NCBI RefSeq assembly: GCF_009834535.1
Contig: NC_045705.1
Coordinates: forward strand, 32,178,001 to 32,242,000
Direction of reading: 5' to 3'
DNA length: 64,000 bases
Source: Camelus ferus
Lineage: Eukaryota
The position numbers and the translations under genes are program-made. Below are positions 3,466 to 33,229 of the stretch, piece by piece. The notes below the pieces were generated by a model. It did not search any database. It saw only the letters and a list, made by a program, of their open reading frames with translations, and was not told where the DNA came from. How positions within the stretch are numbered: the stretch's first letter is position 1; the number at the start of each line of letters is the position of its first letter.

Positions 3466-3839
3466 TTTGACTTATATCCTTTAAATTAGGACCTTGAAGC
3501 CTACCTGAGATGAGAAAGTCTTGGGTAGCTGAGCAATAGCGGATGGTCTTTTATTTTACCAGGTACATTGGGGTTTAAATCTCTGCTACTGCTCATAGGC
3601 ATTCATGTTATGCAAAACATCATTAATTATGTTTCTGCTTTTCTATCTTCCCCTGTGAATTGAGAAGCAACTTTAGGAAGGGGTGAGCTTACATGGCTTC
3701 ATTATTATCACCAAATTGATCTCCAGTGGGAAGAAAACTGCAGATTATTTTAATGGTATGTTTCACAGTGACCTTGAAACTCTCTGCCCAAGTCAGAGGA
3801 AATCTAATGAAACTCAAATAGATCCCTCTTTAATCATTT

Positions 3840-23485: not shown

Positions 23486-23857
23486 CTAATCCAGTAATAT
23501 ACCCTTGTAAATGACATAGTTTACACATGAACACACACACACACTCACACGCACACACACACACACATACACACACACACTTCTGAGGTATGTACTATAT
23601 CCCTTAAGACAAAACAATACAACCAATTTTAACATTAACTCCAAGCTCCTAATAGTTGGACCGTGGTCCAACTATTATTTTGAAACAATCTTGAAACTTT
23701 TAAATGTTTTCTTGGGGCTATGGAACACATTCGGCAGTGTGAAAAACAAGTGTTTGATAAAATGCCTTGTGTGAAAAGTTATGTACGTGCTGCCAAGGTT
23801 TTGCAGGTTCCTAGAGTTTGTAATTGGAGATTTGGGTGAATCTTGGAACACTTTCTG

Positions 23858-24800
23858 TCACGAAGAATCTATCTTTGATCTGATGACTTTTTTAGCAGCG
23901 TCTTTTACATCTTTATTTCTCAAACTATAAATCAAGGGATTCAGCACTGGGATGATGATAGTGTAGAACACTGAGATAATTATCAGTGTTGGGGGAATAC
24001 AGGTAGCTGGGTCGTGAGTAAATGAAGAGGAGAGTCCCCTGGTAAATGGTCACTGAAGTCAGGTGAGAGGCACAGGTGGAGAAGGTTTTCTTCCTCCCAC
24101 TGGAAGAACGGATCTTTAAGACGGAGAGAAGAATGAAAAAGTAGGAGATGACAATGATGATGAAACAGATAATTTCCACTGAGCTGCCATATGTGGAGAG
24201 AAGCAACTCATTAACTGATGTGTCTGTGCAGGATAACTTCAGCAGGGGAGGGAGGTCACAGAAAAAATGATTAATGACATTTTTATCACAGTATTTCAGA
24301 ATAAACGCAAAGGATGTGTGAACCAGGGAACTCACGCTGCCTCCGAAGTATGACAAGACAATCAGCCGTATACAGATGCCCCGAGACATCACAACCATGT
24401 ACAGTAAAGGGTTACAGATGGCGACGTAACGATCATACGCCATGGCAGCCAAGATAAAGGATTCTGTATCCGCAAAAGCACAGAAAAAATAAAACTGCAG
24501 TGCGCAGCCATGATAGGAAATTGATTTGTTCTCGGAGAGGAAATTGACCAGCATTTTGGGAACAATGACTGAGGAATAACAAAGGTCTGCAAAGGAGAGG
24601 TTACTAAGGAAAAAATACATGGGGGTTTGAAGGTGCGGATCGATCCTGATTAACGTCATCAATCCAATGTTCCCCATTAAAATCATGCAGTACAAAGTCA
24701 GAAACAGGAGAAACAGCGCGATCTGTAGTTCAGGGAGAGCTGGAAAGCCTAAGAGAATAAACTCAGTCACCAAGGTATAGTTTCCATCTATAAGTTCCAT
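23858..24800 (-). pseudogene. OR5I1: OR5I1 ortholog with a 2-bp frameshift before TM7 (pseudogene or assembly error)
   Basis: ORF matches OR5I1 ([13 protein letters not shown]...[12 protein letters not shown]) and then shifts frame at 23980-23981. The shifted frame reads [40 protein letters not shown] to a TGA ending at 23858. Adding 2 nt restores 314 aa. Confidence 0.9.
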
Positions 24801-26639
24801 ATTCTCTGTTGTTTCCTTTTTATGAGGGGTCTAACATCCTAAAATGTTGTATTGATGGAAAGAAAAAACAATTGTAGTTATAAGGTTGTTTTATTATTTA
24901 AGTAAACAAACAGGCAATCAAATAAAGAATCCCCCAGCCCAGATTTCCTTCCAAATATAGACTTTGGGAACTATATTTCATAATTTAGTAGCTGTATCTC
25001 ATTTTATTTGTTTGTTTAATGACTATATCTTCTATTGGACAGAGATGTAAAGGTCACATCTGATTTTTTTCTTACCTTTTTGTACCCCAAATATGGCACA
25101 ATAGCTGGCCCAAAAGATTAAAGGAAGTAATAAATTAATGAATGAACTGATGGTGTGACGAGTATATATATATATATATAAAAAAATATATGTATATAAT
25201 AAAATAAAAGAGTATATATATTTATAAAATTAAAATAAATTGACTTATACAATACACCTTGGAATGATAACTATAGAACAATTTGCTCCTTTGGTCTAAG
25301 ATTTAATAGATGGTGGTGTGTGTTGTACTCTTGACAGAGTGGTTGGAATGGCATAATGAAATATACTACAGCTCTTTTTTTTTTATAAATGCTGAATAAA
25401 AGGGAAATGAATAAAATAAAAATAAATGTCAGTAGGCATCAGCTGCATATAGAGTTTAGGGTCATTCCATAAATCCTGTCAAGATACTAAGTCAAGGTAA
25501 TTAAAGTCATTAACTGTTTTTCTCCTTGGCAGTTATTATAATTCTTGGCTTCTAGTACACACACAGTGAATATTAGTTGATTGAGTAATGTGGGTAAAAA
25601 ATTAGTTACCAGTTAACTTCTAATTAAAAAAAAAATACTCAACATAGCCTTCTCACTGATTACACGTGTGAGTAAACACAAATATTTAGCCGCCAGTTAT
25701 TTGTACGTTAATATGATTCACGGTGTTGGGTCCAAGAATTCTGTCCATTCCTGCTTCTGGGGTCTCAGAATTTTCCTGAGAGTAGGAGGAATTTGAATCT
25801 GACTTGAAGTACAAGAAATTTTACACTTAACCTGGAAGGATGGGCTTGAAAATAGATAAATCAAACAAGCAAAACATCCAATGAGCCATGCTGGTGTTGC
25901 CCCAGTGGGCCAGAGTAAAATGGTGTGGGGTCCTCCTCTCCTTTATGTAAATATTATTACGACAGTGATAGTGCTGAGAACCCCACGGTTGGCATATTAT
26001 CCAGTCATTAGAACCACCCTCTGACAGAGGCACAGAGAAGCCTAAGAGAATCAGAAGGGCTAGTGTGCCGTCTTACGTTAGTGCCCCAGAGAGCACGAGT
26101 GAGATGCAGCCCTACGCTGGGAGAGTAGTTAATTTATTCCTATTTTATCTGTTTTCAAAGCAATCAGGGTATTTCAAAAAGATAAGATCTGATTTTAGAG
26201 TCAATAAAAATTTGGAGAGAATCTTACATTGGCTACCTGTGGGCTGTGTGACCTTGCACAATTATATATATATATAACATATATATTATGCATATTATAT
26301 GTAACATTATATATATCCTGTACCATACTATATAGTATTATACTATACTGGACCATACATACCATGTCAGTATTATAAGATATATAAAACATATATAATA
26401 TATGTATGTATTATAATCTGTACTATAATAATGGAAATAAATATCTCACATAATTGCTCTATGGGTCAAATTAGAGAAGTTGTCTATCTAGCTGTCTGTC
26501 TGTCTATCTATCTATCCTTCCAAGCTGTCACACTTAAGACAGACTGACACATAATTGACAAACAGCAAAGTTCAGTTTCAATTGCTCCACTCCTCTTTTA
26601 TTCTTAGCTTATGCCTAGCACCACATGGTAAGGATTTAT

Positions 26640-27010
26640 TAATAACAGCTCCTATTTGTATAATAATTATGATGTGGAATGCAATATTCTAAACACTTTA
26701 CATATAATTCATTTAATGGTCACAAACTAACAAAATTATGATTCAGGTAGTGTCACTATCATTTTTTGTTTACTGATGAAGGAACTAAGGCACAGAGAGT
26801 TTGAGAACCAAGATGTGTTGAAAACAGGATTGGACCCAAGCTCCTGACTCCAAAGCTTTCTGATGCATTTGCTCTACCATAAGCTAGATTCCTGTTAATT
26901 CCATATTTTGCATAAGAACATGGAAGCTTAGAGTGACACTCCAAGTCATTCAGCTGGTAGTGGACAGATGTAATTCAAATTCAGGTGTGTCTCAGGTCAA
27001 AGCTCATGAC
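26640..27010 (-). mobile_element. MIR fragments
   Basis: ataacagctcctatt...actgatgaaggaactaaggcacagagag...ctgactccaaagct. Confidence 0.6.
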
Positions 27011-27599
27011 AGTAATAGGAGATTGGTTGGAGCCTTAATAATGTGGCGACTGTGAGACTGTGAGTCGCTGAAGGAAGAAAGGAATGACTCACATATTTAC
27101 TGAAAACATAGAGCATGACTCTCAGGGATGTACACGGAGCATCCACTGAGAGCCTGAGAATTCTATGTAGAGAAATGTGAGTGGGAAGAGAAGCCTGAGG
27201 GTAAAAACAGAAGATAGCAAATCTTGCATTCTTGCTTTAGAAGAGACCGAACAAAAAGATCCCATCAAAATGCTTTGATTCACTAAATTCTTCCCAAATA
27301 TAGACCAAAATAATGTTAAAATAGAAAATAAATTAATTCCAAATATCAGGAAGTCAGCCATGCTTCAGTTTTCTCATCTGTAGCAAAATAGCTTATTTAA
27401 ACAAAAAGTGTTTCTGATCCCTGCATAAGCCATGTAAGAAACAGTGACACGAGATAGATTTCTTTGTGCATATGAAACTGATAAATGTGATTTCTTAATT
27501 ATTTAGACGTAAATCAGTGGTTCTTTCTCCCAGATCCACAAAAGCCTATCTTTGCACCTTAAAGCCAGTCTGGTAACCACAGAAGCTACTTACCAAGGA

Positions 27600-27880
27600 A
27601 GGCGCTGTTTTCCAATTACCCAGATTACCCCGATGAATAATTTCACCAATAGAACCAAGGACTTTTACATACATTCTTATGTCATTAGGGACCTAATAAT
27701 TGAAGGATTCTAAACATACGCTTTTCCAAGGGACTCCTAGGGAACAATTAGCAGGTTATTGCTATTGTAATTTACTTTTTAAAATACTTTGATGATTATA
27801 ATAGCAACTCTGTTAGTACTAGTTTGAATGCGCAATTTTCACGGTCATTAATATTGTGGTTGTTTTTAATGATATGTGGA
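27600..27880. promoter_or_regulatory. Candidate OR enhancer (Lhx2/Ebf 'Greek island'-like)
   Basis: Minus strand 27751-27724 reads CTAATTG-T-TCCCTAGGAG-TCCCTTGGAA; further homeodomain sites at 27613, 27682, 27697, 27845, and TTTTTAATGA at 27863-27872. Confidence 0.55.
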
Positions 27881-28090
27881 ATTCTACAAAAGACCCCCTT
27901 TGTTATGGAGGTTCTTTGTAAATAGTTCAGATATTTAAAAATGTAACTATTATTATTTAAATTATTTTAAAAACCACTTGGAAGCTCAAAGCTGTTACCT
28001 GTTATTAGTAGTACTGAAAGCTGATATTCTTGGTGGTTTTGAGGGGTAAGCCCAGTGGAAGATTCTGCAGAGTTTGGTATCAGCAAGTGC

Positions 28091-28594
28091 TGTCTTAAGA
28101 AAATGGAAGGACTTTAGATAAGCATCTTCTGAAAAGATGGGAGGACTTTAAATATGCCTGAGAGCATCTGGCTCTGCTTGGATTAAATCGCGAGGCCCTG
28201 CAGCCGCTGACCTCCAACACACCCTGAAAGGAGTTCAGGATCCAGGTCAGGAATGAGGTGCTCTGTGCTCTGGGAAGACTGCTGAACAGGCCTTCAGATA
28301 GATATTTTCAGGAGGAGATTTTATCAGCCCAAATTCTTGCCTCATATCTAGAAAAGCACTAAAATCATTAACAGTGACACCTGCTCCCCATAACGAGCAG
28401 CAAGCTTCTGCCTAAGTGTATGTCTGACTGCACGTGCCCCCCTTCACTGAAATCATATGTAGTATTGAGTTCCCTCTGCCTCTTCAGAGCAGTTCCTCAG
28501 AGCTGAGATGCTGTCTCCCAGGCTAGATCCTCATTCTGACCCAAATAAAACTTAACTCACAGTTCGCACGTGTGTGATTTTGTTTTAGTTGACA
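28091..28594 (+). mobile_element. ERV1-type LTR
   Basis: tgtc start, caaataaaacttaactc poly(A) region, ends ttttagttgaca. Confidence 0.65.
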
Positions 28595-29256
28595 GATTGT
28601 TGTGATATTTCACATTAGTTTTTGGCTCCAATTGAGAACTTCTAGGAGACAAAAGATCAATTACAAACATCATATAGAGCAGAAATTGTCAGCCCCCAAA
28701 GTTAACCTGTGTGATACAGAGGGCCATCAGGAAAATATATGCTGCTTTCCCCCAAAAACCTACAACACTCACCGTGAAGCAGCCTTAAGGAAATGCTCTT
28801 TGGCATTGGGATTGCTTGAGAATGAATGAATGCTTTCTGTTTGCCTAGAGTTCTTACATCCTCCAGACACGAGATGGCACCAGAGACAACTGTGTAATCA
28901 TCTAGTTAGTGAGAGCCTCTGTTTCCAGGAGATTCTTTTATGCATCCAGCGATTGTCACCCCAATCATGTGTAGCACGCAGCAGAGGAGGGCAATTTCTT
29001 GCACCAGAAGCCCTGGGGCAACTTACAACCATCATAGGTGATCCAAAGACTCCAGCACACAGGAGGGAAGGTTGCTAAAGCTTCTAGAATAAAGAGGCCT
29101 CCTCTGGGAGGCACTAACAGGAGTGCCAAGTGTATTGTAATTCGGACAGATTTCAGAAGCTGCTTTTAGGAGACCCAATTAAATGAAAGAACATTTGTGA
29201 GAACCAGCATAGATTAGCTTAGGTAAAAGTTGTAAATCAAGAATGCGTTGCTTCTA

Positions 29257-29393
29257 AGGGGGAAGGGTAGAGCTTAGTGGTCGAATGGATGCTTAGCATG
29301 CATGAAGTTGTCCCAGGTTCGGTCCCATACCTCTATTTAAAATAATAAAAATAATAAACAAACAAACAAACAAACCTAATTACCCTTCCCCTC
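29257..29393 (+). mobile_element. tRNA-derived SINE (camelid Vic-type) with TSD
   Basis: Degenerate A and B boxes, (aaac)n tail with cctaattaccc; TSD aatgc(g/a)ttgcttc at 29242-29254 and 29396-29408. Confidence 0.8.
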
Positions 29394-29653
29394 AAAATGC
29401 ATTGCTTCCAGATCTCAGAATATCTGTAAGACGTCATCTTCGTTTTAATATTATGGGTATGAAGAAGATCGATAATTGTTTCCTTGTAGTTGTAAGGATG
29501 GGACAACTTTGAGTTTGCCAAAGAGTCTTCAGGAATGTAACTGAGCCGGTGGAGCCTGACTGTAGTCAGGATCACGGCCCAACCCCTTTCATGATCTTCT
29601 TTGTCCATGTGTGTTCTTGTTCACTGGGCTGCACCCCACAGGCCTGCTAGGCT

Positions 29654-30103
29654 TGTAAATGCCCAGCCTGAAGACCGAAGAAAGAGCCACTGACGCTGAC
29701 AGAGACATCAGTGGTTTATTGGACAGGGGATCTTACACATCCCAGGCAAAGGTGTCCTGGAACGACACCCTCTATGGATGGCAGAAGGCAGGCAGGACAT
29801 GGCAGCACCTTCCCTACCGGGGGAGAGGAGGTCACCAGTTAGAGACGGAACTGAGGTCAGGTTGGCTCCCTGGTTACCAGGGAAACCAGCAAGGGGCACG
29901 CCCCTCACTGCCCTTTGATAAACTAGCTAAAGATTAGAACAATCACTAGTTAGGGCTGGGGCGCTAGTATGTAGGCGTTCACTGATTAGGCTCTAGGATT
30001 AAGAGGGAAGGTCAGCCAGGTGAGTAGGTGTAGGAGAAACAGGGGCTGGTGAGCAGGGCATGTACAGAGAGCGAGACAACAGCCATCTTGGGGGGCCTGA
30101 TCA
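29654..30103 (-). mobile_element. LTR (solo)
   Basis: Minus strand tg...ca termini, AATAAA at 29720-29715. Confidence 0.6.
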
Positions 30104-30164
30104 GACCCAGTTGGCTTGCAAACTTGAGAATTTCCCCAGCAGAATTTAAAAGTGGCCCTCATAC

Positions 30165-30560
30165 ATGGAGGGCAAGGACAGGCTGAAGAAAGAAGCAGAT
30201 CACTCCAGGTTGGGTGGTGACAGGTTTAATAATTTGTAATAACTTACATATGAGGCTTGTCTTGCACGGCCACAAGACAGGTAGATCTCAGTACCCACCC
30301 ACTAGGACCTTTAAAGTGTATATAAAGCCCTTCACTGGCCGGGCTATTGAGATTCCCCATGAGCAGCCAAGTAAAGATGCGTTATAGTCCTTCAGAGGGG
30401 AAGGCAAACTGCCTCTGAGATGCTGCTGGAATAGGCACTGAAGAGAACATATTAGGTTAATCTATAGCTGCAACATATTTAACAGTTGCTCACTGAATGG
30501 TGGGTAATGTCAGTAACACTGCCCATGGAGACCCTGCGGGTGGAACCATGGCCTTAAGAT
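30165..30560 (-). mobile_element. LTR fragment (boundaries approximate)
   Basis: ATTAAA at 30230-30225 in an LTR R/U5-like context, TATATA upstream. Confidence 0.5.
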
Positions 30561-30736
30561 CGTGGCAGTATAGTGTCATTCATTATTTTCAACCTTAAGA
30601 GCTGAACAAATTGGGCTGCAAAATGGAGAAGCAGTGGGGATCATCACACCTTCTCTAAACAGGTATTACATGATGGGTTTAAACCCTTGAAATCTCTGTT
30701 TTATTTTACTTTGGGCCATTTTAACTGTTTTAACCA

Positions 30737-31047
30737 TGTGGGTGAAATGGAATGAATTGTCTTTCCAAAATTCTTATGTTGAAACCCTAATCCACAGTGT
30801 GATGGTGTGTGGAGATGCGACATTTGGGAAGTATATGACAGTTCTCCAGAGAAACAGAATAAACAGATAGATGAATACAAAGATGGATATCTATCTGTCT
30901 GGAGAGAGATTTATTACAGGAATCAGATTGTGAGATTATGGCGGCCAAGCAGATAGTCCAAGGAGCATCAGTCACTGAGGGAAGGAAAGACGAATGTCCC
31001 AGCTCAAGTAAAGGGAGAGAAATCCACCTTTCCTCTGACTTTTTGTT
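30737..31047. mobile_element. MLT1 5' part interrupted by an MLT2 (ERVL) LTR fragment
   Basis: ttcttatgttgaaaccctaatcc (MLT1), then gttctccagagaaacagaa...gagatttattacaggaat...gtcccagctcaag (MLT2, minus strand). Confidence 0.65.
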
Positions 31048-31490
31048 GTGAAATGTCAGAGTTTGGCACAGAGAAAGGTTTATTGCAGAGAGAAGCAAAT
31101 AGGACCCAGTGTCTCATGATCAAAAAAAAAAAACAAAAAATAAAAAGCCAAATACCCAAAGAGTTTCAACAAAGCACATTTAAAGGCCAGATAAGGGAGA
31201 GAGTTTGCAGGGTACAGGATCAGCTTGTGCACAATCCTCTGATGGGTTGATGTAGAGGTAAGAGGGTGGTCCACACTATCGACCCCTGGGTACCAGAATG
31301 TCTGGGGCCACGTGCCCTTGACCATCAAGTAGTTAATTTCTTCCCTTTGGTGGTGGTTTTTAGCATCTGAAAAACTCAGGGAATACACATGAGATACTAT
31401 TACCTGGGTACTTCAGAGATGAGCTACAGCAGAGGATGTGGGGGAGCAGGCTGTCCTGGGAAGGCCCCCACAGGGTCCTGCTCGGTTACA
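31048..31490 (-). mobile_element. ERV1-class LTR
   Basis: Minus strand begins tgtaaccgagcaggaccctgtggggg; AATAAA at 31084-31079. Confidence 0.7.
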
Positions 31491-31780
31491 ATCTACCCCC
31501 CACACACCAAGAAACGGTGAAAATCCGTATTACTCATATAACAAGGTTTTCTGGAGACAGTAGGGCAGCTCCAAAGCGGGTCCACAAATGCTTCCAGAGA
31601 ACAAGGAAAGGAGAGTGGCTCGGTGTTTTTATGGCGGTTAGGGTACCAGGGTGGGTTGAAGGTTCCTGCGTGTGGGTCAGGGATCATGTGGTTTGAACTT
31701 CCCACTGACACTAGAGTAGGAAGCGCCAGGCTTTCTGAGCAGCTTGTTCAGATGTGGGGGGAATGGGAGCAGGGAGGATG

Positions 31781-32620
31781 GACCTTGAGGATGTTATGTT
31801 ACGTGAAATAAGTTGGATAGAGAAAGACAAATACTTATGATTTCACTCATATGTGGAATATTAACTGCAGAGCCAGCTGCCACCCTGTAGAGTCATAAAC
31901 CCCCACCCCTGGGCTCTCTGGGTGCCTGGAGCCTAGGGAAACCTTAGCCCCACTCCCCACTGCAGGGCTTTTTGCATACCTGCATCTCTGCAGGATATAA
32001 AACTTCTTGATGTGTGTTTACTCTAATAAAACCCATCGCGCCAGGAGACAGCCCCTCCCGCGGACAGGTCTCACAACCTCCCCTTATCAAACTGCTAAAA
32101 ACTGTTGTTCAGAGAAGTCCCTGACAGATCTTACAACCAGCTGTGCACGAACTGATCATGCAGCCCCTACTCCTTGTGTGCACAGCGCCCTCCCCCTAGT
32201 AAAAGACCCTGCACGCCCACCCGCGGCACTCACACAGGCACCTCTCCCCTGTGTGGCCCAGTGTCACCCACATCAGTGTAACTATTAAACTTTCCTAAAC
32301 TCCTCTCAGTTTCTGGTAATTCTTTACCAACCCACGTTACCAGCCCGCTGCATTGTGACCCACAACATTAAATCAATCAATCAATCAATCAAAATGAACA
32401 AACCAAAGCAAACACATGGCTGCGAGAACAGAGTAGTCGTTACCAGAGAAGATGAGGTATCAGGAGGGGACGGTGGGTCAAGCGGGTGAACTCTGGTGAC
32501 AGACGCAAGCTTAAGTTTTGTGGTGAGCACACTGCACAGCATTCAGGTGTCAAAATACAATATTGTATACATAAAGCTTATATCCTGTTATAGAGCCAAA
32601 AAAGGCTGTCTGCAGTTGAA
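31781..32620 (+). mobile_element. L1 3' end interrupted by the LTR at 31865-32367
   Basis: gaccttgagg...gagaaagacaaatacttatgatttcactcatatgtggaat, resuming at aatgaacaaaccaaagcaaacac...ttaccagag. Confidence 0.7.
31865..32367 (+). mobile_element. CpG-rich (younger) solo LTR nested in L1, ttaa TSD
   Basis: ttaa on both sides (31861-31864 and 32368-32371), attaaa signal, ends gacccacaaca. Confidence 0.7.
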
Positions 32621-33229
32621 TATCAACATAGAGACAGATTTTATTACACTTTCTTGTACATAAAAGGGAGGACATGTTGGTGGCTGATCAGTCGTACTTC
32701 CTCCCAGGAGAATATTGGGGTGATGGTCTCTTCCGTTTTGTAATCTCCCTGCCCTCTGCAGCCTAAGCTGGCAACGCTTTTGTTGAAAGGACTTTCTCGA
32801 ATACTTTGTGACCGCCCGTGGATGTCACAGTGTTTCACTCCCTTTGACAAAGCTACACTCGCAGGTTTCTTTCAAAGTAAGAACTGCTCTACTGAGGTCC
32901 CTGCTGAGATATGGAAGGGCAGCCCACGGACGTTTCCTAGGGGCTCCGTGGACTGACTCAGATGGTCTGCGAGCCACATCCTTAATGTCCTGAAAGCACT
33001 AATTGTGTGAGAGAGCACGTCTGTGGTCCCTTGAAATGGCTCAGGTTTTAACAACAAATTGTACAAGTCTTTAGTTCCATGCCCTGTGCTCAGAAGCCAT
33101 TTTTAAAATTTAGGATTTTTTGTTTGCTTTTACCTTCTGATGGCTTCAGAAAATTTTCAAATTTTTCAAACACTGGAACCTTGTTTATTGGTTCTTTCCT
33201 TAATTTTTCTCCTGTTACATTTTACCTTA

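What the first reader, a model, noticed from the sequence alone, without database searches (positions are those of the whole stretch)
27600..27880. Lhx2/Ebf composite-motif cluster resembling a 'Greek island' OR enhancer
Seen: on the minus strand, 27751-27724 reads CTAATTG (Lhx2 homeodomain site), a 1-bp spacer, TCCCTAGGAG (Ebf/O-E site) and directly a second Ebf site, TCCCTTGGAA. Within 280 bp there are also TCCC-TAATGA (27682-27692), TAATTG sites (27613, 27697), TAATGA (27845) and TTTTTAATGA (27863-27872), which resembles the extended homeodomain motif of the H and P elements. The block is non-repetitive, lies ~2.8 kb upstream of the OR5I1 ATG and sits between MIR/L2 debris and an LTR pile-up. 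Established: OR enhancers are enriched for Lhx2 sites placed 1 bp from Ebf sites. Inference: this is a cluster-level enhancer controlling OR choice here, or possibly a distal OR5I1 promoter.
Basis: partly seen in the sequence, partly recalled or inferred. Interest (0 to 1): 0.72.

Follow-up and report, generated by a model that had tools for sequence, protein, structure and literature searches.

The report
Conserved OR5I1 promoter and first exon
The motif cluster is real and conserved across placental mammals, but it looks like the ordinary promoter and short non-coding first exon of the smell-receptor gene OR5I1, not a cluster-wide 'Greek island' enhancer.

Summary
The block is the densest homeodomain-site cluster in the 64 kb window. 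It is single copy and aligns to the OR5I1 loci of nine other placental mammals.

The anatomy fits a promoter, read on the minus strand, which is the strand of OR5I1:
- Lhx2 site, 1 nt, then two Ebf-like sites (27751-27724)
- a conserved O/E-like GGTCCC box (27693)
- a conserved TATA-like box (27671-27662)
- about 45 nt of putative exon
- a consensus splice donor, TTG|GTAAGT (27594/27593)
- a 2,755-nt intron
- a conserved acceptor, TTTTAG|G (24839/24838), 38 nt before the ATG (24800)

Cross-species conservation peaks at 27800-27550, at coding-exon level. The donor and GGTCCC are the most constrained hexamers; the composite motif is less so. I read it as the OR5I1 proximal promoter plus non-coding exon 1 (confidence 0.78).

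Its Lhx2-Ebf spacing matches the Sfaktiria composite, and 10 of the 63 mouse islands lie at OR promoters. A dual 'promoter island' role therefore stays open (about 0.15).

Camel OR5I1 itself carries a 2-nt frameshifting deletion.

The scan noted a separate Greek-island-like candidate elsewhere in this genome (s1-149172).

The parts
27745..27751 (-). Homeodomain (Lhx2-type) site CTAATTG, the first half of the composite arrangement
   Evidence: TAATTR is kept in 7 of 10 species. It is lost in galago, kangaroo rat and pika.
27734..27743 (-). Ebf/O-E-like site 1, TCCCTAGGAG, 1 nt from the homeodomain site. The proximal TCCC half-site is perfect and the distal half is imperfect.
   Evidence: There is no indel between the HD site and TCCC in any of 10 species. 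Spacer T plus TCCC is identical to camel in 6 of 9 other species; raccoon dog and elephant have TCTC and pika has TTCC. The spacing equals that of the Sfaktiria composite probe.
27724..27733 (-). Ebf/O-E-like site 2, TCCCTTGGAA (1 mismatch to TCCCNNGGGA), abutting site 1
   Evidence: It is identical only in horse and degraded in most other species.
27694..27716 (-). Conserved box TGTTTAGAATCCTTCAATTAT, including a homeodomain core (TAATTG on the + strand, 27697-27702). The factor that binds it is unknown.
   Evidence: ATGTTT is among the seven most conserved hexamers of the 600-bp block.
27682..27693 (-). O/E-like site GGTCCCTAATGA, the best conserved motif of the block and probably the main Ebf site of the promoter
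   Evidence: GTCCC is identical in 9 of 9 other species and GGTCCC in 8 of 9. Galago and kangaroo rat read TCCCCAGTGA, 1 mismatch to the Ebf consensus.
27662..27671 (-). TATA-like box TATGTAAAAG (TATATAAAAG in bison)
   Evidence: A TATA-like sequence is present in 9 of 10 species and deleted in pika. It lies 69-78 nt upstream of the donor.
27594..27640 (-). Putative non-coding exon 1, about 45 nt. The start is inferred from the TATA spacing and an Inr-like TTATTCA at 27640-27634. It contains a camel-specific 9-nt tandem duplication (27634-27617) and a TAATTG at 27618-27613. It holds no ATG.
   Evidence: The start site is inferred and not mapped.
27586..27593 (-). Splice donor GTAAGTAG (exon|intron = TTG|GTAAGT)
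   Evidence: GTAAGT is identical in 7 of 9 other species. Pika has GTGAGT and flying fox has GTAAAT. The three hexamer windows over TGGTAAGT are among the seven most conserved of 596.
24839..27593 (-). Inferred intron 1 (2,755 nt)
   Evidence: It aligns at a lower level, with 0.45-0.6 of species identical.
24839..24860 (-). Polypyrimidine tract and splice acceptor, ending in TTTTAG. Exon 2 starts at 24838.
   Evidence: The AG is invariant and the tract is conserved in all 10 species.
23925..24838 (-). Exon 2: a 38-nt 5' UTR with a small uORF (24837-24820), then the OR5I1 coding sequence from ATG 24800. In this assembly a 2-nt deletion near 23981 shifts the frame, giving a 291-aa ORF against 314 aa in orthologs.
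27845..27872 (.). Distal homeodomain cores: TAATGA on the minus strand at 27850-27845 and TTTTTAATGA on the plus strand at 27863-27872. Both are poorly conserved.
   Evidence: identical in 1 of 9 and 3 of 9 other species.

Best explanation
The block is the proximal promoter of the class II odorant receptor gene OR5I1, together with its short non-coding first exon. All coordinates below are on the minus strand.

Proposed mechanism:
1. Ebf (O/E) and Lhx2-type homeodomain factors bind the cluster of sites at 27751-27682.
2. TBP binds the TATA-like box at 27671-27662.
3. Transcription starts about 30 nt further on, near 27640.
4. A roughly 45-nt exon is spliced from the donor at 27594|27593, over a 2,755-nt intron, to the acceptor at 24839|24838, 38 nt before the ATG.

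What is shown: the motifs, their clustering, the donor and acceptor, and their conservation in ten placental mammals.

What is inferred: factor binding, the exact start site, and use of the splice sites.

In camels the promoter now drives a gene with a frameshifted coding region, if the assembly is right.
For: - Same strand as the OR5I1 ORF and 2.8-2.95 kb from it. Mouse OR TSSs lie 4.2 kb from the ATG on average, range 0.2-24 kb (PMC3247239).
- Consensus donor TTG|GTAAGT 130 nt downstream of the composite, and a consensus acceptor 38 nt before the ATG.
- Both splice sites are conserved in all ten species. The only donor variants, GTGAGT and GTAAAT, keep the GT.
- Donor hexamers and GGTCCC are the most constrained of the 596 hexamer windows.
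- The fraction of species identical to camel peaks at 0.72-0.82 in 27800-27550. That equals the coding exon (0.77-0.86) and stands above the intron (0.45-0.6).
- A TATA-like box is kept in 9 of 10 species at a fixed distance from the donor.
- The block is repeat-free and single copy, with GC 0.34-0.36.
- These features match the published description of OR promoters: O/E sites in the last 200 bp, conserved HD sites, a TATA peak at -60 to -10, repeat content falling and conservation rising toward the TSS, and about 36% GC (review PMC12547500).
Against:
- All nine fetched orthologous gene calls are CDS only.
- The curated human OR5I1 model is CDS only, and expression in human olfactory mucosa is very low (PMC7055050 supplement).
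- An exon of 36-45 nt is short.
- The start site rests only on TATA/Inr spacing.
- Composite Lhx2/Ebf motifs are reported as depleted from OR promoters. This promoter would be one of a small minority: about 4 of the first roughly 215 mouse promoters score 10 or more.
Confidence: 0.78

Rival explanations
1. Promoter-type Greek island. The block is the OR5I1 promoter, and it is also bound cooperatively by Lhx2 and Ebf in most mature olfactory neurons. In that role it takes part in the interchromosomal enhancer hub, as the mouse islands Kea, Serifos, Souda, Delos and Agistri do.
For: - The Lhx2 site, 1-nt spacer and Ebf 10-mer have the same order, orientation and spacing as the Sfaktiria composite used in the EMSAs. 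A 2-nt insertion already impairs binding of the fusion protein there.
- The spacing is invariant in 10 of 10 species. HD site and TCCC are both intact in 5 of 10.
- Ten of the 63 islands lie within 500 bp of an OR TSS, and 5 of those score 10 or more for the composite.
- The camel block shows the fewest private changes of the ten species although the gene is frameshifted.
Against: - The composite is less conserved than the donor and the downstream O/E-like site. Exact TAATTG is kept in 2 of 9 other species, and Ebf site 2 in 1 of 9.
- Under a loose definition such a composite is expected 0.42 times per 64 kb.
- The HOMER score could not be computed because the matrix is not held.
- In the homologous mouse cluster (chr2:85.2-90.4 Mb, 269 ORs) only Paros, Meganisi and Samos are listed. 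By my recollection of the mouse map, none lies at the OR5W/OR10AG junction.
- No binding or accessibility data exist for any species that has the block.
Confidence: 0.15
2. Stand-alone intergenic Greek-island enhancer that controls OR choice in the cluster and is not the OR5I1 promoter.
For: - It lies in an OR cluster, is dense in HD and O/E sites, and has a composite-type spacing.
- It is conserved across placentals, as the J, H and P core elements are.
Against: - This reading must treat the conserved TATA-like box, the consensus donor, the matching acceptor and the shared strand with OR5I1 as coincidences.
- The strongest constraint lies on the donor, which an enhancer does not need.
- The H/P-type extended homeodomain match is weak and not conserved.
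- No listed mouse island corresponds to it.
Confidence: 0.05
3. Conserved non-coding sequence with no olfactory role, or a chance motif cluster. Examples would be an exon of an unrelated non-coding RNA or an old repeat fragment.
For: - There is no expression or binding data.
- AT-rich DNA yields many TAAT cores.
- The loose composite is not rare.
Against: - It is the densest HD cluster in the window.
- Conservation is at coding-exon level in nine other species from four placental superorders.
- The motif content and geometry fit an OR promoter.
- The block is single copy.
Confidence: 0.02

Closest known systems
Proximal promoters of class II odorant receptor genes (Young, Luche and Trask 2011, PMC3247239; also Michaloski 2006, Clowney 2011 and Plessy 2012, as cited there and in PMC12547500)
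   Same: - It lies kilobases upstream of a single coding exon, on the same strand.
- O/E and homeodomain sites cluster in the last 100-150 nt before the inferred start.
- It has a TATA-like box.
- It is AT-rich and free of repeats, and it forms a local conservation peak.
- A short non-coding first exon is spliced to an acceptor just before the ATG.
   Different: - The homeodomain site and the Ebf half-site are juxtaposed at 1 nt. That arrangement is reported as depleted in OR promoters.
- The start site is not mapped.
- In this genome the gene it serves is frameshifted.
Greek-island OR enhancers, e.g. Sfaktiria, and the promoter-overlapping islands Kea, Serifos, Souda, Delos and Agistri (Monahan et al. 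2017, PMC5608512)
   Same: - It lies in an OR cluster.
- It is a roughly 300-bp block of Lhx2 and Ebf motifs.
- It shares the order, orientation and 1-nt spacing of the Sfaktiria composite.
   Different: - It sits at an inferred TSS, not in intergenic DNA.
- No ChIP or ATAC data are available for it.
- The composite score was not computed.
- The composite is less constrained than the splice donor.
- No listed mouse counterpart was found.
H and P elements and the core J element, with the extended homeodomain motif AACTTTTTAATGA (PMC7804114)
   Same: It has multiple homeodomain cores next to O/E-like sites in a block conserved across mammals.
   Different: - The best match, TTGTTTTTAATGA at 27860-27872, shares 10 of 13 positions (the run TTTTTAATGA).
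- It lies on the opposite strand.
- It is kept in only about 3 of 9 other species.

Membership tests
OR gene proximal promoter | Upstream of an OR coding exon on the same strand, at 0.2-24 kb (mean 4.2 kb) | tested here: met
   The block is 2.8-2.95 kb upstream of ATG 24800, on the minus strand. The range comes from PMC3247239.
OR gene proximal promoter | O/E (Ebf) site(s) within about 200 bp upstream of the TSS, conserved across species | tested here: met
   Three O/E-like sites lie at 27743-27682. GTCCC of the proximal one is identical in 9 of 9 other species. The TSS position itself is inferred.
OR gene proximal promoter | Enriched and conserved homeodomain sites | tested here: met
   Six TAATKR sites in 281 bp is the window maximum. 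TAATTR of the composite is kept in 7 of 10 species.
OR gene proximal promoter | TATA box at about -60 to -10 (present in a subset of OR promoters) | tested here: inconclusive
   A conserved TATA-like box lies at 27671-27662, 69-78 nt before the donor. Its distance to the true TSS cannot be measured without RNA data.
OR gene proximal promoter | Repeat-poor, AT-rich, no CpG island, and a local peak of cross-species conservation | tested here: met
   The block is single copy. GC is 0.34-0.36, with 7 CpG in 500 bp. The conservation peak is 0.72-0.82, against 0.45-0.6 in the intron.
OR gene proximal promoter | Non-coding first exon with a functional donor, spliced to an acceptor shortly before the ATG | tested here: met
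   Consensus donor and acceptor are conserved in 10 of 10 species. Their use in RNA was not shown.
OR gene proximal promoter | Mapped transcription start in olfactory epithelium RNA | not testable with these tools
No run on record as olfactory RNA was found.
Greek-island OR enhancer (Monahan 2017) | Co-bound by Lhx2 and Ebf, and accessible in bulk mature OSNs inside H3K9me3 heterochromatin | not testable with these tools
   The definition comes from PMC5608512. No ChIP or ATAC data can be reached for a species that carries the block.
Greek-island OR enhancer (Monahan 2017) | Stereotyped Lhx2/Ebf composite motif (HOMER score 10 or more in 35 of 63 islands) | tested here: inconclusive
   Order, orientation and 1-nt spacing are the same as in the Sfaktiria probe. 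The HOMER matrix is not held, so no score was obtained. The loose pattern is expected 0.42 times per 64 kb.
Greek-island OR enhancer (Monahan 2017) | Intergenic, more than 500 bp from an OR TSS (53 of 63 islands) | tested here: not met
   The motifs lie 40-110 nt upstream of the inferred OR5I1 start. Ten of the 63 islands are exceptions to this feature.
Greek-island OR enhancer (Monahan 2017) | Orthology to a listed mouse island | tested here: inconclusive
   The homologous mouse cluster lists only Paros (90.41 Mb), Meganisi (85.73 Mb) and Samos (86.10 Mb). No Mus or Rattus protein appears among the 120 best OR5I1 hits. No mouse DNA was available, and the synteny placement is from memory.
H/P-type extended homeodomain element | AACTTTTTAATGA-type 13-mer, conserved | tested here: not met
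   Ten of 13 positions match at 27860-27872. The core is identical in 3 of 9 other species.

The most novel reading that the evidence does not exclude
The OR5I1 promoter carries a composite Lhx2-Ebf site with Greek-island spacing whose register has not shifted in about 100 million years. The block acts as a promoter-embedded island that serves the OR5W/OR5I/OR10AG neighbourhood. That role would explain why it stays intact in camels even though the OR5I1 coding sequence is frameshifted.
Probability: 0.12. Interest if true: 0.6.

Novelty: new member of a known kind. Interest (0 to 1): 0.3.

Why it matters
- It supplies a testable gene model for OR5I1: promoter, exon 1, a 2.75-kb intron and exon 2. 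OR5I1 is an unusually conserved receptor (85-91% protein identity from camel to marsupials). Its curated human model and all nine fetched gene calls are CDS only.
- It is a concrete case of a composite-type Lhx2/Ebf arrangement inside a promoter. The current model reserves that arrangement for enhancers, so the block is a convenient natural substrate for asking whether spacing alone gives island-like binding.
- Otherwise it is an ordinary OR promoter.

Tried and rejected
- **Read laying.** I submitted window 23700-28100 with two possible RNA runs and two other camel species. So there was no read evidence for the splice junction, for the frameshift, or for variation among camels.
- **Sequencing runs.** The searches found only near-identical (camelid) DNA runs and no run on record as olfactory RNA.
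- **Marsupial orthologs.** Opossum, wombat and sugar glider returned no DNA. Conservation is therefore shown only within placentals.
- **Statistics of the composite.** The tight pattern (0.04 expected) was post hoc. A looser a-priori pattern gives 0.42 expected. I therefore did not use the composite's rarity as an argument.
- **HOMER composite score.** It could not be computed. The matrix is in none of the held supplements that I searched or read (searched all 38 by word; files 11, 31, 32, 33 and 37 were read).
- **H/P extended homeodomain motif.** Rejected as weak and not conserved.
- **TE origin.** Rejected for the block itself.
- **Literature on OR5I1.** The papers I opened give neither a promoter nor a mouse ortholog.
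- **Complex prediction and structure tools.** Not used, because they are not relevant to a DNA element.

Full report
**Observation.** The other listed sites are also there:
- TAATTG at 27618-27613 (-) and 27697-27702 (+)
- TCCCTAATGA at 27691-27682 (-)
- TAATGA at 27850-27845 (-)
- TTTTTAATGA at 27863-27872 (+)

Six TAATKR cores in 281 bp is the maximum for any sliding window in the 64 kb (mean 1.04, 99th percentile 5). The tight composite pattern occurs once against 0.04 expected, but that pattern was written after the fact. An a-priori looser pattern is expected 0.42 times per 64 kb. I therefore give the composite's rarity little weight. The block has no second copy in the window.

**The gene.** The ORF at 23925-24800 (-) is OR5I1. 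It is 85-91% identical to proteins named OR5I1 in ruminants, pigs, primates, rodents, elephants and even marsupials. Three OR5W-like genes lie on one side and three ORs on the other. This fits the human gene order OR5W2, OR5I1, OR10AF1P (PMC7055050 supplement). The ORF is 291 aa instead of 314. Compared with nine orthologs, the camel sequence lacks 2 nt in an A run (GAT--AATTATC against GATAAAATCATC), near 23981. The deletion shifts the frame before TM7. I did not test that.

**Anatomy on the gene's strand.**

| Feature | Coordinates (minus strand) |
|---|---|
| Composite HD/Ebf/Ebf | 27751-27724 |
| Conserved box with a CAATTA core | 27716-27694 |
| O/E-like GGTCCCTAATGA | 27693-27682 |
| TATA-like TATGTAAAAG | 27671-27662 |
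| Inr-like TTATTCA | 27640-27634 |
| Consensus donor TTG\|GTAAGT | 27594/27593 |
| Intron, 2,755 nt | 27593-24839 |
| Pyrimidine tract and acceptor TTTTAG\|G | 24839/24838 |
| ATG (38 nt after the acceptor) | 24800 |

This is the standard OR gene layout of promoter, short non-coding exon, intron and coding exon.

**Comparative test.** I fetched 21-kb OR5I1 loci from bison, horse, hippopotamus, raccoon dog, galago, elephant, kangaroo rat, flying fox and pika. Three marsupial attempts returned no DNA.
- Camel 27900-27300 aligns in all nine, at 62-75% identity and at the collinear position upstream of the gene. The block is therefore old, orthologous and not a lineage-specific repeat.
- The fraction of species identical to camel peaks at 0.72-0.82 in 27800-27550. 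It is 0.77-0.86 in the coding exon and 0.45-0.6 in the intron. Nothing aligns at 28150-28600 or above 28950.
- The donor is GTAAGT in eight of the ten species, GTGAGT in pika and GTAAAT in flying fox.
- The acceptor AG and its pyrimidine tract are kept in all ten species.
- A TATA-like box is kept in nine species.
- GTCCC of the O/E-like site is invariant.
- Of 596 hexamer windows in the 600-bp block, only seven are identical in at least 7 of the 9 other species. Three of those cover TGGTAAGT and one is GGTCCC.

The composite is less constrained:
- TAATTR is kept in 7 of 10 species.
- The proximal TCCC is kept in 7 of 10, and both together in 5 of 10 (camel, bison, horse, hippo, flying fox).
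- Raccoon dog and elephant have TCTC.
- Galago, kangaroo rat and pika have lost the homeodomain core.
- No species has an indel between the two halves.
- The second Ebf-like site and the two distal TAATGA cores are poorly conserved.

**Comparison with the literature.** Young et al. describe 314 mouse OR promoters (PMC3247239):
- TSS on average 4.2 kb from the ATG (range 0.2-24 kb)
- repeat content falling and conservation rising toward the TSS
- about 36% GC and no CpG island
- O/E sites enriched in the last 200 bp
- conserved homeodomain sites
- a TATA peak at -60 to -10

The block matches each of these points.

Monahan et al. define Greek islands by Lhx2/Ebf co-binding and accessibility in bulk mature OSNs. 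A stringent composite motif is found in 35 of the 63 islands and is depleted in promoters. In their source data about 4 of the first roughly 215 promoter rows score 10 or more, and one of those is the island Kea. Ten of the 63 islands lie within 500 bp of an OR TSS, and five of those have a composite score of 10 or more.

The only composite printed as sequence is the Sfaktiria probe. On the Lhx2 strand it reads TAATTG-A-TCTCCAAGGA. That is the same order, orientation and 1-nt spacing as camel TAATTG-T-TCCCTAGGAG. A 2-nt insertion there already impairs recognition. I could not compute a HOMER score because the matrix is not held.

The homologous mouse cluster (chr2:85.2-90.4 Mb, 269 ORs) lists only Paros, plus Meganisi and Samos from Wu et al. 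2024. I followed that second list after a lead in s1-149172. From memory, the mouse OR5W/OR10AG junction is near 87.6 Mb, away from all three, but I could not verify that. No Mus or Rattus protein appears among the 120 best OR5I1 hits.

**Verdict.** The best-supported reading is the OR5I1 proximal promoter with its non-coding first exon (0.78).
- A dual role as a promoter-type island is possible (0.15).
- A stand-alone enhancer is unlikely (0.05), because it leaves the donor, acceptor and TATA conservation unexplained.
- The shown steps are the sequence features and their conservation.
- The inferred steps are factor binding, the start site and splicing.

**Limits.**
- I have no RNA, ChIP or ATAC evidence.
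- The frameshift could therefore not be checked in reads. The camel block shows the fewest private substitutions of the ten species (6) and the ORF is otherwise intact. The deletion is therefore either recent or an assembly error.

Noticed in passing
window 23971-23990 (minus strand), deletion near 23981: Camel OR5I1 lacks 2 nt of an A run that is present in all nine fetched orthologs (GAT--AATTATC against GATAAAATCATC). The frame shifts before TM7 and the ORF ends at 291 aa instead of 314. This is a pseudogene or an assembly error. No camel OR5I1 protein appears among the best database hits.
   Followed up: partly
window 3600-3800: A second cluster holds two Ebf-like sites (TCCCCTGTGA at 3649 and TCCAGTGGGA at 3722), each with 4-5 homeodomain cores within 150 bp. 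It lies about 2.1 kb upstream of the OR5W-like gene whose ATG is at 1554 (minus strand). It is probably that gene's promoter.
   Followed up: no
window 24820-24837 (minus strand): A five-codon upstream ORF (ATG TTA GAC CCC TCA TAA) starts at the second base of exon 2, in the 5' UTR of OR5I1. An ATG at this position is kept in bison, horse, hippo, raccoon dog, flying fox and pika. It is absent in galago, elephant and kangaroo rat.
   Followed up: partly
window 27617-27634 (minus strand): A camel-specific 9-nt tandem duplication (ATCGGGGTA ATCTGGGTA) lies inside the putative exon 1. All nine other species have one copy.
   Followed up: partly
window 27550-27593 (minus strand): The first 40 nt or so of the inferred intron (GTAAGTAGCTTCTGTGGTTACCAGACTGGCTTT) are as conserved as the promoter (0.82 of species identical). 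That is more than a splice donor needs, so a downstream regulatory element may lie here.
   Followed up: no
window 28150-28600 and 28950-30200: No sequence here aligns to any of the nine orthologous loci. GC rises to 0.45-0.53 from about 28000 to 33000. This fits lineage-specific insertions upstream of the promoter. The repeat class was not determined.
   Followed up: no
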